Part shown: positions 42,501-45,500 of the stretch, piece after piece
Position numbering within the stretch: position 1 is the first letter of the stretch
Layout: each line of letters opens with the position of its first letter
Assembly (NCBI RefSeq): GCF_006345805.1
Contig: NC_042997.1
Span: 137,392,001 to 137,456,000, forward strand
DNA from: Octopus sinensis
Lineage: Eukaryota
DNA: 64,000 nt
Direction of reading: 5' to 3'
Made by a program: the position numbers and the translations under genes
Notes under the pieces: model-generated
The model's input: the letters and a program-made list of their open reading frames with translations, nothing else
Told to the model about the DNA's origin: nothing
The model's database searches: none

Positions 42501-45500
42501 GGACAACCAGTCAAAAACTTGGGGAAAGTCTTTGACAGCAGACTGGAGAATACTGTTTCCATTTATAGAACTAGCAAAACGTCTTGAGAACTGGCTTATC
42601 AGAGTTGACAAATGGATTGCTCAGCCTCTTCAATGCTTGGGTATAACAGCATGCCATTCTGCTCAAGATTTTGTGGCCTCAGCCATTATATGTCGGCATG
42701 TCAACTCTGGAAATCCTGCAGAGGAAGATGAACAGATTTTCGAGGAGGTGGCTTGGCTTAGCAAGGAGCCTGTATGAGTTACCCAAGATCTTATGACTCC
42801 CATTCAGCAAACTTCCAGAGGGCTAACATGCCGTAGTGAGATCCAGCATATTAGATTTTCAGATTTCTAACCAAGGCTGTCTACAACAATTTACCAAGTG
42901 CATCCATAAGATGTCTCTTAAAACTGAATATATGTTAATATTTATACGAGACAGTATTACTGATCTATTTCAGTTAATTTTACCAATTGGTTTCACACAC
43001 AAGTTAGGAGATAATTTAAGATGGTACTCATCAGAAAGGCTGGCGTAAAGAATATGGCCATACTTTGCATGCCAGCCCCTCTGATGAGCATTGCCTTAGT
43101 TTTCCTTTAATTTGTATGTGAAACCAATTGGTAAAAATCAGCTATAATGGATCTATAATACTGTATAAGATAAATGATATACTCACTCTATTGATAAATA
43201 TATGAGTGCCTGTTTTTTTCTGACTAATGGATTCTTACATGACCTATGTGTGTGTGAGTGTGTGTTTCATATTTATATATATATATATATATATATATAT
43301 ATATCTTCAAAATGGAGATAAATACCATTTCTCCATGTGATCAGCTTGAAAACACATACTAGAAAAAGTGTAGAAATATGAAATGAAACAGGAAAAAAGG
43401 ATCTAGATTCTCTGATGAATATAAAAATGAGGATGATGATGATAATGATTATTGCTTTTTAGCTCTAAGACAGCCCAGATTAAGCAAACATATATTCAAA
43501 GACATTCCATCCATGATCACTCCAGTCTTCTACATACTGAAGAATATACTATCCTATGTGTCCTGTTGTCAAGAGATTTGAAGGAGCTTAGGCTCCAATT
43601 TGTAACAGGCTGAGCAACCATGTAGAGGCTCCTTCATTAATGATGATGAAGATGATGTTAGTAATGGAGATGATGACAAAATTCTTTATAATAATAAAAA
43701 TTAAAGAAAAAAACCTTACTTTATTCATTTCTTTTGTTGTTTGCTTCAATTGTGAGGAAGTTTTCTTAAAATTTTTTGTAATTTCTTCAATGTTCTGTTC
43801 CAGCTGACTTATTGTTTCTTCTTTCTGAGCCAGTAGTTTTCTCTAGAGAAGTCAGAGAAATACTAAATGAACAAAGCAGTCATCAAAATATTCAAAGATT
43901 CAATAATAATTTAGTCATTTGTAATTGTATAAAAATAAACACAGAACAAAAAAAAAAATAGCATTATCAAATTAGAATTAACTGTTAATTGCTTGGACAA
44001 ATTATTAAAAGAAACAGGAGACAGCCAATCTAATTAGCCAATATGTGTCTCATAGTAATAAATATTAATGGTTATATGTGATGATTTGGTGAGTCCCATA
44101 ACACTCTGAAACAGAGGTCTATCAAACATTTCATCTTTATGTAGTACACAGAAAACAAGTTAGCTTTGCAGAATCCATTCCTGTCTGAGCTAATCCACAG
44201 GAAGAATTCAATGTAAAACTCTGCAATATAAGCTTATGATGCACTTAGAAGTTTATAATTCTCACTATTTACACTGTTGTATCTATTTACAGCTAGGCAG
44301 AGTCTTGGCTATTTGAGAGTTAAATGTTTTGGTCACAGATACAAAACAGTATTAGTGACAAGATATGTATAAACAACTAACGTCTTGATTACTTATCTGG
44401 TATCCTACCAATTTGGCCTAGAAGATTGACGGAGATTATATAGTGTACAATGATTTAATAGAAGAGAGAGTCAGAGATATTGTATGTGAGACTACTTTCA
44501 TCTTCAGTCAATTCCTCAGGAGAGACCATTTTGTTTTTGATTCTTTAAAGAAATATCAGAGGAAGACAGAAACTGAAGATAGATTTGATATACACTGAAG
44601 ATAAATTCAATGTTCACAAAACATAGCTGCAATATTCAATAAAGAAAAGTTCTAATGATCCATTATGACAACAGCAATGTCCAATAGTAGTTTCAAATTT
44701 TGGCACAAAGCCAGCAATTTTAGTGGAAATGGGTAAATCAATTACATTGGCCCCAGTGCACAACTGCTACTTATTTTATAAACCCTGAAAGGATGAAAGG
44801 AAAAGTTGATCTTGGCAGCATTGAGCACTGTTCAATAATGACGACTGCAATGTTCAAATAAAGACAACTGCAATATTCAATAAAAATGGCTACAGCTGTC
44901 ATTATGGCAAAAGCTATAATTGTTATGAAAATACCAGACACAAGGAAATCAGCATATATCACAGTGAGATTATATTATTGACAACATACATTTTCATCTA
45001 GTTCTCGTTCTATTCCTGAACACTTCAATGTTAACTCATTGTTGAAGTTCATCTGTTTCTTCAAGGCATCATCTAATTGATCATTTTTGCTTGTTTTACC
45101 TTTGAGTTCTTCTTTTTGCTGTAATACAGATAAAAAAAACCATTTAATTTTGTGATTAACATTTAGTAAAATTCCTAATATAACAACCTTTCATTTACTT
45201 GTATATTCCATTGTTCCATTTTCAATGATTAGAACCAGTTTTGAGCCCCTCATATTTAATGACAGCTGGAAAAGAATTGAGACCATTGTCCAAGGGATCA
45301 TAGTCTGGTTCAAAACTTTTGGAATAAACCTCATATACTAAATTATATTAATGTGTCTTCCTATCACAACTCCTCAAACACTGGTATTTAAGATTGTTTT
45401 GAAAAGAAAACTCACAGATATTCTTGCTATTTCATCACGTATCATCTACACATTTTATCAGCTGCAGTTATAATTGGTCCTAACCTTTGAAACTGTCTTG

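What the first reader, a model, noticed from the sequence alone, without database searches (positions are those of the whole stretch)
42940..43176. Foldback with two intact hammerhead cores, one sense to the EEA1 pre-mRNA
Seen: each arm has CUGAUGA, GAAA, A15.1-U16.1 and a GUA triplet, with helix III ACC-AAUU-GGU, which is palindromic. The minus-strand copy (43037-42978) would cut between 42981 and 42980 inside intron 16-17. The plus copy would cut after 43133. Helices I and II are weakened (C11.1 is now U in both). Established: Penelope-like retroelements carry minimal type I hammerheads with palindromic helix III that cleave as dimers. Inference: a PLE pLTR relic that could still nick the host pre-mRNA or be an ADAR substrate.
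Basis: partly seen in the sequence, partly recalled or inferred. Interest (0 to 1): 0.72.

Follow-up and report, generated by a model that had tools for sequence, protein, structure and literature searches.

The report
Dead hammerhead-like foldback in intron
A 212-base palindromic repeat relic in an intron of a cephalopod EEA1 gene carries the hammerhead ribozyme's conserved core letters in both arms, but it lacks the helices a ribozyme needs and should fold into one long inert hairpin, so it is an ordinary decayed mobile-element remnant.

Summary
Window 42940-43176 is a foldback with two ~106-nt arms that are 73% alike. The minus strand is the sense strand of an EEA1 orthologue. The window is cephalopod, probably an octopod, not human. 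The intron number could not be checked.

The motif is not a working hammerhead:
- Helix I is only 1 and 3 base pairs.
- Helix II is 4 pairs closed by G.U, with a 24-25-nt interior.
- The hammerhead fold of an isolated arm costs +4.8 and +7.2 kcal/mol, against -10.9 and -8.7 for its free fold.
- In the whole foldback (-98 to -103 kcal/mol) the core is base-paired with probability at least 0.999.
- No Rfam hammerhead family matches, even at E<=10 on single arms.

The motif is still rarer than chance (about 4e-4 per 64 kb). All 21 core positions survive in both arms (p about 6e-4). The age fits the octopus Penelope-like wave.

I favour, at about 55%, a head-to-head pair of 3' fragments of a hammerhead-bearing Penelope-like element. 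A MITE with coincidental boxes gets about 30%. No other copy could be obtained, so the origin is unproven.

The parts
42943..42951 (.). Candidate target-site duplication, left copy (TATACGAGA)
   Evidence: It matches TATAAGATA at 43164-43172 in 7 of 9 positions, directly abutting the element ends. Only 0.4% of 9-mer pairs at that spacing in the window match this well. Suggestive only.
42952..43057 (-). Left arm of the foldback. Read on the minus strand, which is sense to EEA1, it carries the hammerhead-like unit.
   Evidence: Inverted-repeat pairs I1-I3. 73% identity to the right arm.
43058..43163 (+). Right arm of the foldback. Read on the plus strand it carries the second hammerhead-like unit.
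   Evidence: The arms meet without a spacer at 43057/43058 (ATGG|CCAT).
43164..43172 (.). Candidate target-site duplication, right copy (TATAAGATA)
43028..43034 (-). CUGAUGA box (C3-A9) of the minus-strand unit
42995..43027 (-). Helix II region of the minus-strand unit. Four pairs (G.U, U.G, A-U, C-G) enclose 25 nt. An irregular extension of 2+3 pairs is possible.
42981..42994 (-). GAAA box, helix III (ACC-AAUU-GGU, a 10-nt perfect palindrome) and A17 of the minus-strand unit. The nominal cut site is between 42981 and 42980.
43081..43087 (+). CUGAUGA box of the plus-strand unit
43088..43119 (+). Helix II region of the plus-strand unit. Four pairs (G.U, C-G, A-U, U-A) enclose 24 nt. An irregular extension of 2+4 pairs is possible.
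43120..43133 (+). GAAA box, helix III (ACC-AAUU-GGU) and A17 of the plus-strand unit. The nominal cut site is after 43133.
42067..43719 (-). Host intron (1,653 nt, GT...AG) of the EEA1 orthologue. It contains the foldback 543 nt from the 5' splice site.
   Evidence: Splice sites read. Flanking exons 43842-43720 and 42066-41968 match Sepia esculenta EEA1 residues 792-838 and 838-865.

Best explanation
This is an old, inactive mobile-element relic. A 212-bp near-palindrome (42952-43163), probably flanked by a 9-bp target duplication, lies in a 1.65-kb intron of the EEA1 orthologue of a cephalopod, most likely an octopod.

Each arm is a copy of a ~106-nt unit that holds a degenerate minimal type I hammerhead-like motif. 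The motif has an intact core and a 3-bp helix III with a palindromic tetraloop. Helix II is weak and helix I is practically absent.

Most likely origin (inferred, about 55%): two severely 5'-truncated 3' ends of a hammerhead-bearing Penelope-like retroelement, laid down head to head in one insertion tens of millions of years ago.

What it does now (computed from structure prediction, not shown experimentally): nothing catalytic. In the pre-mRNA the second arm zips onto the first as soon as it is transcribed. This gives a 92-bp imperfect hairpin that buries both core boxes. The only expected effects are those of any intronic double-stranded RNA, such as possible A-to-I editing or small-RNA production.
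For: Foldback and hairpin:
- Established.

No catalytic competence:
- Helix I is 1 bp (+ arm) and 3 A-U bp (- arm). Helix II is 4 bp with a G.U closure.
- The hammerhead secondary structure costs +4.8 and +7.2 kcal/mol. The best fold that keeps the hammerhead pairs is +1.6 and +2.7. The free folds are -10.9 and -8.7.
- In the full foldback the core nucleotides are paired with probability 0.999-1.0.
- The homodimer uses the ACCAAUUGGU duplex (-13 kcal/mol) but still mispairs the core.
- No Rfam hammerhead family is hit at gathering score, nor at E<=10 on 411 nt or on each arm alone.

For a true hammerhead ancestry:
- A motif of this quality is expected about 4e-4 times per 64 kb by chance.
- All 21 core columns are identical in both arms, although 29% of columns differ (p = 6e-4).
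- The three differences within the 4-bp helix II all keep pairing: C-G to U.G, and U-A to C-G.
- C11.1 followed by G12 is a CpG, so U11.1 in both arms can be explained by parallel CpG decay.
- Helix III (15.1-16.1 plus two pairs plus a tetraloop) is the invertebrate type I design (PMC7229834).
- PLEs often carry an adjacent inverted 5'-truncated copy (PMC8557442).
- Paired min-HHRs on opposite strands, 100-700 bp apart, are known in Schistosoma (PMC4209133).
- The Drosophila virilis PLE hammerhead has only a 2-bp helix I and a bulged helix II (PMC4209133).
- PLEs are a major old repeat class in octopus, with a wave at JC distance 0.2 (PMC13282606, PMC8967140). The arms give JC 0.33, or about 0.17 per arm.

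Context:
- EEA1 orthologue on the minus strand.
- Intron borders.
Against: - No second copy of the unit exists in the window or in any searchable DNA collection. The 'family' therefore consists of the two arms only, and no covariation test is possible.
- No PLE reverse transcriptase or GIY-YIG ORF is nearby.
- Tested traits of PLE min-HHRs are missing: the G10.1-C11.1 pair, the unpaired nucleotide after A9, a helix I of 4-5 bp, and a contiguous helix II of 6-8 bp.
- Even taking the better base from either arm, helix I reaches only 3 A-U pairs. That is hard to reconcile with a canonical type I ancestor.
- The exact symmetry of the arms, the CAGT...ACTG termini with TA on the right side, and a second unrelated foldback in the same window (51490-51756) all fit a DNA-transposon MITE.
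- Inactivity is predicted from thermodynamics and models. It has not been measured.
Confidence: 0.55

Rival explanations
1. It is a non-autonomous DNA transposon (a MITE or foldback element, of Tc1/mariner or another TIR superfamily). Its arms happen to contain CUGAUGA, GAAA and a palindromic 10-mer. The blocks conserved between the arms would then be transposase-binding or terminal motifs, or products of arm-to-arm gene conversion. They would have nothing to do with RNA catalysis. As RNA it is just a hairpin.
For: - The palindrome is perfectly symmetric, with no spacer.
- The termini are CAGT...ACTG, with TA directly after the right end and GA before the left end.
- A candidate TSD is present.
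- A second, younger foldback (arms 128 nt, 93% complementary) and a deleted mariner with 34-bp TIRs lie in the same 64 kb.
- Tc1/mariner elements and MITEs are listed for octopus genomes (PMC13282606, PMC8967140).
- Helix I is absent and no covariance-model hit appears.
Against: - It needs a coincidence of about 4e-4 per 64 kb for the motif, and that coincidence must also fall inside a foldback.
- All 21 core positions survive in both arms (p = 6e-4), and the helix II differences preserve pairing.
- A 9-bp TSD, if real, excludes Tc1/mariner, which duplicates TA.
- The arm divergence (JC about 0.17 per arm) is older than the octopus TIR wave at JC 0.09 (PMC13282606).
- The mariner in the window has unrelated TIRs.
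Confidence: 0.3
2. The minus-strand hammerhead, alone or as a dimer through the palindromic helix III, still cleaves the EEA1 pre-mRNA between 42981 and 42980.
For: - The catalytic core, A15.1-U16.1 and the GUA triplet are intact in both arms.
- A 10-bp intermolecular helix III of -13 kcal/mol is possible.
- Some PLE hammerheads with very short helix I show weak cleavage when helix III is extended (PMC4209133).
Against: - The hammerhead fold has positive free energy, and helix I is 3 A-U pairs at best.
- The antisense arm is transcribed first in the pre-mRNA, and the core is paired with probability at least 0.999 in the hairpin.
- Only one sense copy exists per transcript, so a dimer needs two pre-mRNAs.
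- Even intact PLE min-HHRs cleave poorly in vitro (PMC4209133).
- No hammerhead model hit appears.
Confidence: 0.03
3. It is a local inverted duplication, or a hairpin kept by the host as a microRNA or siRNA precursor or as an editing-guiding structure. Under this reading the hammerhead boxes are irrelevant.
For: - The hairpin is long and stable.
- The only Rfam matches are weak ones to long microRNA-precursor models.
- Conservation between the arms is patchy.
Against: - The Rfam microRNA matches are far below gathering scores (41.8 against 330 bits) and reflect hairpin shape only.
- The arms have decayed to 73% identity with bulges throughout, which is unlike a maintained precursor.
- No expression or cross-species data could be obtained.
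Confidence: 0.07

Closest known systems
Minimal type I hammerheads of Penelope-like elements (Cervera and De la Pena 2014, PMC4209133), especially the Drosophila virilis/Penelope-clade variant
   Same: - CUGAUGA...GAAA core, type I topology, and a small palindromic helix III suited to dimer formation.
- Very short helix I (2 bp in D. virilis) and a helix II that can be read as longer with a bulge.
- Occurrence as pairs on opposite strands 100-700 bp apart.
- Low or no activity as a monomer.
   Different: - G.U instead of the highly conserved G10.1-C11.1 pair.
- No unpaired nucleotide between A9 and 10.1.
- Helix II has only 4 contiguous pairs, enclosing 24-25 nt.
- No pLTR/ORF context and no family of copies available.
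Canonical invertebrate type I hammerheads of non-LTR retrozymes (PMC7229834; bioRxiv 10.64898/2026.07.22.740005)
   Same: - 4-bp helix II.
- Helix III with two pairs beyond 15.1-16.1, capped by a tetraloop.
- AT-rich carrier sequence.
   Different: - Retrozymes are direct tandem repeats of about 300 bp with a 6-bp helix I and loop 1-loop 2 contacts. This element is a single inverted pair with no helix I.
- It fails the -5 kcal/mol stability criterion used for 'active' motifs.
- It sits in an intron, where retrozymes are depleted.
Head-to-head inverted 5'-truncated PLE insertions (Craig et al. 2021, PMC8557442)
   Same: Two copies of an element's 3' end in inverted orientation, abutting at their truncated 5' ends. 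The hammerhead motif lies near the 3' end.
   Different: Both arms are truncated at exactly the same base. No tail, ORF or direct pLTR is recognisable.
Palindromic MITEs of DNA transposons (Tc1/mariner-type, such as human MADE1)
   Same: About 200 bp, whole-length inverted repeat, CAGT termini, intronic location, and a long hairpin when transcribed.
   Different: - TA is present on one side only. The better duplication candidate is 9 bp.
- No related autonomous element or second copy was found.
- MITEs are not expected to carry a complete hammerhead core with a palindromic helix III.

Membership tests
Hammerhead ribozyme, type I (Rfam Hammerhead_1 and related families) | Conserved core C3 U4 G5 A6 N7 G8 A9 / G12 A13 A14 / A15.1-U16.1 / H17 | tested here: met
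   All positions are present in both arms.
Hammerhead ribozyme, type I (Rfam Hammerhead_1 and related families) | Helix I formed by the sequences upstream of C3 and downstream of the cleavage site | tested here: not met
   1 bp (+ arm) and 3 A-U bp (- arm). Over ten positions, 4/10 and 3/10 pair in register, which is chance level (and direct reading).
Hammerhead ribozyme, type I (Rfam Hammerhead_1 and related families) | Helix II closed by G10.1-C11.1 | tested here: not met
   G.U in both arms. Four pairs in all, two of them wobble in the minus arm.
Hammerhead ribozyme, type I (Rfam Hammerhead_1 and related families) | Match to a curated covariance model | tested here: not met
   No hammerhead family is hit at gathering score, nor at E<=10 on 411 nt or on each arm alone.
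Hammerhead ribozyme, type I (Rfam Hammerhead_1 and related families) | Thermodynamically accessible three-way junction | tested here: not met
   The hammerhead structure costs +4.8 and +7.2 kcal/mol against free MFEs of -10.9 and -8.7. The core is paired with p>=0.999 in the foldback.
Hammerhead ribozyme, type I (Rfam Hammerhead_1 and related families) | Site-specific self-cleavage | not testable with these tools
   Needs an in vitro transcription assay or RNA-end sequencing.
PLE minimal hammerhead (PMC4209133) | Short helix III with palindromic 15.2-16.2 and loop 3 | tested here: met
   ACCAAUUGGU is a perfect 10-nt palindrome in both arms.
PLE minimal hammerhead (PMC4209133) | Unpaired nucleotide between A9 and 10.1 | tested here: not met
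   G follows A9 directly and is itself the 10.1 partner of U11.1. Shifting the register by one base gives no helix (which allowed an offset of 0 or 1).
PLE minimal hammerhead (PMC4209133) | Long helix II (6-8 bp) and helix I of 4-5 bp | tested here: not met
   Helix II has 4 contiguous pairs, or 4+2 with a bulge in constrained folds. Helix I has 1-3 bp.
PLE minimal hammerhead (PMC4209133) | Many genomic copies forming consensus families with compensatory changes | not testable with these tools
   No other copy was found in the window or in the viral, metagenome or prokaryote collections. The source genome is not searchable here. Between the two arms, three helix II differences all preserve pairing.
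Penelope-like element insertion (pLTR relic) | Association with a reverse transcriptase plus GIY-YIG ORF, or with direct pLTRs | tested here: not met
   No such ORF lies in the 1.65-kb intron. The RT fragment scanned (55192-55521) matches only the general RVT_1 family, below its cut-off, and its YADD motif looks non-LTR. The ORF at 795-1118 gave no Pfam match and is RT-like by eye only. Only 8 ORFs were scanned against Pfam, so PLE coding sequence elsewhere in the window is not excluded.
Penelope-like element insertion (pLTR relic) | Inverted 5'-truncated copy abutting another copy head to head | tested here: inconclusive
   The geometry fits, because both motifs point outward from the centre. 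A MITE has the same geometry.
Tc1/mariner-type MITE | Terminal inverted repeats ending in CAGT, flanked by a TA duplication | tested here: inconclusive
   CAGT...ACTG is present. TA is on the right and GA on the left. The better duplication candidate is 9 bp.
Non-LTR retrozyme | Direct tandem repeats, each with a type I hammerhead | tested here: not met
   The two units are inverted, not tandem. No tandem array was found by TRF in 40000-46000.

The most novel reading that the evidence does not exclude
The hammerhead cores are kept by selection rather than by luck. The hairpin would act as a lock on a weak, dimer-dependent ribozyme in the EEA1 pre-mRNA. Unwinding or A-to-I editing of the duplex, which is very active in cephalopods, would free the minus-strand motif to cut the intron. 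That would be an editing-gated self-cleaving switch derived from a Penelope-like element.
Probability: 0.03. Interest if true: 0.7.

Novelty: new member of a known kind. Interest (0 to 1): 0.2.

Why it matters
As it stands, this matters little. Decayed repeat insertions that form intronic hairpins are routine, and hammerhead relics of Penelope-like elements are already known by the thousand in invertebrate genomes.

Three minor points of value:
- It shows that a complete hammerhead core with a palindromic helix III can persist in both arms of a foldback roughly 45 Myr old after helices I and II have gone. That is a caution for motif-only ribozyme calls.
- If the origin is confirmed, it would document hammerhead-bearing PLE relics in cephalopod genes. 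I found no paper on this in the library I searched.
- The unusual survival of all 21 core positions (p about 6e-4) gives a cheap, testable hint of constraint.

Tried and rejected
1. Human EEA1 context. I wrote human EEA1 from my own memory, as a lead only, and ran tblastn against the window. It gave collinear minus-strand hits at only 25-64% identity, so the window is not mammalian. Database names then confirmed EEA1. The best relative, P0001, is a Sepia esculenta transcript.

2. Other copies of the unit.
- blastn and nhmmer within the window found none.
- Exact-pattern scans found only chance hits in IMG/VR.
- A hammerhead-shaped pattern found nothing in the metagenomes.
- The 20-mer found one bacterial coding hit.
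- The prokaryote genomes gave nothing.

3. Reaching the source genome through proteins.
- A search with a SINE-derived ORF found nothing.
- A mixed alignment of four ORFs flanking the foldback found nothing.
- Exact look-ups of two more flanking ORFs found nothing.
- An exon ORF did recover about 1-kb Logan contigs of a sister species. They cover a different exon, 25 kb away.

4. Naming the species. The accession numbers of those runs appear in no paper in the library. Cluster look-up gave no names.

5. Literature search for the helix III/core sequence string found no paper. The supplements of the two key PLE papers are not held.

6. Rfam microRNA hits (MIR869, mir-2) were rejected as hairpin-shape artefacts far below gathering scores.

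7. Kinship with the mariner in the window was rejected because its TIRs are unrelated.
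Full report
**What is there**

Window 42940-43176 is a near-palindrome. The repeat finder reports three collinear inverted-repeat pairs that together span 42940-43057 against 43058-43175. A global alignment of one arm with the reverse complement of the other gives about 70-73% identity. The arms meet without a spacer at 43057/43058.

As RNA either strand folds into one long imperfect hairpin. The minimum free energy is -103.2 kcal/mol on the + strand and -98.3 on the - strand, with z-scores of -12.4 and -11.1 against dinucleotide shuffles. 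The minus-strand hairpin has 92 pairs. Nothing else in the 64-kb window resembles the arms (blastn and nhmmer).

**The hammerhead boxes**

- On the + strand: CUGAUGA 43081-43087, GAAA 43120-43123, A15.1-CC-AAUU-GG-U16.1 at 43123-43132, and A17 at 43133.
- On the - strand: CUGAUGA 43034-43028, GAAA 42994-42991, the same helix III at 42991-42982, and A17 at 42981.

The nominal cut sites (after 43133, and between 42981 and 42980) are therefore correct. Position 11.1 is U in both arms.

Because the arms are copies of each other, this is one motif seen twice, not two independent finds.

**Is it more than chance?**

I wrote a descriptor and ran it on the window and on 400 first-order Markov simulations of the window.
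- Core plus a helix III of at least 3 bp plus U-H occurs 1.03 times per 64 kb by chance. The real window has one such bystander at 20365(-).
- Adding a helix II of at least 4 pairs lowers the rate to 0.058.
- Core plus a helix III segment that is a perfect palindrome (no helix II requirement) occurs 0.0075 times.
- A helix II of at least 4 pairs together with a palindromic helix III never occurred in 400 simulations, which is about 4e-4 by multiplication.

All 21 core columns are also identical in the two arms, although 29% of alignment columns differ. That has p = 6e-4 if differences fell uniformly (in the printed alignment a gap in the A-run made the script miscount, but the columns themselves are identical).

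The three differences inside the 4-bp helix II all preserve pairing (C-G versus U.G at 10.2/11.2, and U-A versus C-G at 10.4/11.4). So the resemblance is not trivial.

**Why it is not a working ribozyme**

- Helix I is 1 pair in the + arm and three A-U pairs in the - arm. Over ten positions, only 4 and 3 pair in register, which is chance level (and direct reading). Picking the better base from either arm does not improve it.
- Helix II is four pairs closed by G.U, around 24-25 unpaired or weakly paired nucleotides.
- For isolated 83-84-nt arms, the hammerhead secondary structure costs +4.8 and +7.2 kcal/mol. The best structure that contains the hammerhead pairs is still +1.6 and +2.7. The free folds are -10.9 and -8.7. 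These values fail the -5 kcal/mol criterion used for 'active' animal motifs (bioRxiv 10.64898/2026.07.22.740005).
- A homodimer does form the 10-bp ACCAAUUGGU duplex (-13 kcal/mol) but leaves the core mispaired.
- In the whole foldback, CUGAUGA and GAAA are base-paired with probability 0.999-1.0.
- In the pre-mRNA the antisense arm is made first, so the sense motif can zip up from the centre as it emerges.
- Rfam 15 gives no hammerhead family at gathering score over the window, none at E<=10 over 411 nt, and none over each arm alone. The only matches are weak hairpin-shaped microRNA models far below threshold.

**Context**

The window is not human. My recalled human EEA1 aligned collinearly on the minus strand, but at only 25-64% identity.

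A spliced model of 854 residues found proteins named early endosome antigen 1 from many animals. The best was a Logan transcript (P0001, E = 2e-196). Its run, SRR1386223, is Sepia esculenta RNA-seq (PMC6906322).

P0001 gives 29 collinear exon matches across 63258-6406 at a mean of 53% identity. The last two exons carry the FYVE finger.

The window is packed with SINE-like families. Among cephalopods, that is typical of octopuses (PMC8967140).

The foldback lies in a 1,653-nt GT...AG intron (43719-42067) between exons 43842-43720 and 42066-41968. These are the 15th and 16th exon matches inside the window. About 207 residues of the protein lie upstream of the window, so 'intron 16-17' cannot be confirmed and the true number is probably higher.

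Contigs of a sister species cover another exon of the gene at 90.4% identity, JC 0.10 (Logan SRR11869384/85/91/94).

**Origin**

Two readings remain.

(a) A head-to-head pair of 5'-truncated 3' ends of a hammerhead-bearing Penelope-like element (PLE).
- The literature supports the geometry. PLE insertions often have an adjacent inverted 5'-truncated copy, and hammerheads sit near the 3' end in pLTRs (PMC8557442).
- Paired min-HHRs on opposite strands 100-700 bp apart are reported in Schistosoma (PMC4209133).
- The Penelope-clade variant has a small palindromic helix III, a 2-bp helix I and a bulged helix II (PMC4209133).
- PLEs are a major old repeat class in octopus genomes, with a wave at JC distance 0.2. 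TIR transposons peak at 0.09 (PMC13282606).
- The arms give JC 0.33, about 0.17 per arm.
- U11.1 in both arms can be parallel decay of the C11.1-G12 CpG (inference).

(b) A palindromic MITE with coincidental boxes.
- The symmetry is exact.
- The termini are CAGT...ACTG, with TA on the right.
- A candidate 9-bp duplication is present: TATACGAGA and TATAAGATA, 7 of 9 matching, against 0.4% of random pairs.
- The same window holds a second, unrelated foldback (51490-51756) and a deleted mariner.

The coincidence required by (b) is small, and PLE relics are common in these genomes. On that basis I put (a) at about 55% and (b) at about 30%.

Several defining traits of PLE min-HHRs were tested and not met: the G10.1-C11.1 pair, the extra nucleotide after A9, and a helix I of 4-5 bp. 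No family copies or PLE ORF could be examined. I therefore do not file it as a member. I only say it most likely descends from one.

**What could not be done**

The source genome is not searchable with these tools.
- Pattern scans of the viral, metagenome and prokaryote collections gave only chance hits.
None yielded the orthologous intron of another species or another copy of the family.
- Two exact look-ups failed.

**Verdict**

The feature is an ordinary decayed repeat relic that now acts only as an intronic hairpin. Interest is low (0.2).

The one unexplained point is the perfect survival of the core in both arms. It leaves about a 3% chance of something functional.

Noticed in passing
window 51490-51756: A second, younger foldback. 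Its arms are 128 nt, 93% complementary, with an 11-nt spacer. It starts right after a (TA)n run at about 51455-51487. The CTGATGAG at 51627-51634 sits in its apex and is part of the palindrome, not a hammerhead. It has no similarity to the 42940-43176 foldback.
   Followed up: partly
window 27683-28612: An internally deleted mariner-type element of about 930 bp with 34-bp terminal inverted repeats (91% complementary). It has two broken ORFs. One carries the Mos1-type HTH_48 domain (E = 3e-18).
   Followed up: partly
window 55192-55524 (+) and 792-1118 (-): ORF 55192-55524 is a reverse-transcriptase fragment that looks non-LTR by its YADD motif (RVT_1, E = 2e-5, below the Pfam cut-off). ORF 792-1118 looks RT-like by eye only and had no Pfam match. 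No PLE-type ORF was recognised, but only 8 ORFs were scanned against Pfam.
   Followed up: partly
window 3772-3846, 11586-11660, 22670-22744, 23358-23432, 27209-27283, 59716-59790 and reverse copies such as 61985-62078, 63528-63621: A very abundant short interspersed repeat with the conserved stretch GGCTGGATGCCCTTCCTAA. It has at least ten copies in both orientations. It also ends the sister-species contig L019. Several other 3-4-copy families are present, for example 9700-10030, 38259-38590 and 48426-48780.
   Followed up: no
window 63353-63560 and 49956-50059; 50470-50691: Tandem arrays of a 26-nt unit (GTGACACATGA-type) attached to the SINE-like repeat, and a separate 23-nt tandem array (…CTAAACTCCAC…).
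   Followed up: no
L019-L022 (Logan SRR11869391, SRR11869385, SRR11869394, SRR11869384) against window 17300-18500: Contigs of a closely related species cover the orthologous EEA1 exon (window 17894-17712). The 43-residue ORF product that overlaps the exon is identical. The 930 aligned columns (exon plus flanking introns) are 90.4% identical with several indels. The window's own species was not found in the protein or contig collections.
   Followed up: partly
window 43269-43304: A (TA)18 microsatellite lies about 105 bp to the right of the foldback. Some PLE clades (Naiads) prefer (TA)n targets (PMC8557442), but the array is not adjacent to the element.
   Followed up: no
window 20334-20365 (-): A chance-level hammerhead look-alike. 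It has CUGAUGA, GAAA and a 3-bp helix III with a 7-nt loop, but helices I and II of only 1 bp each. It illustrates the background of about one such match per 64 kb.
   Followed up: yes
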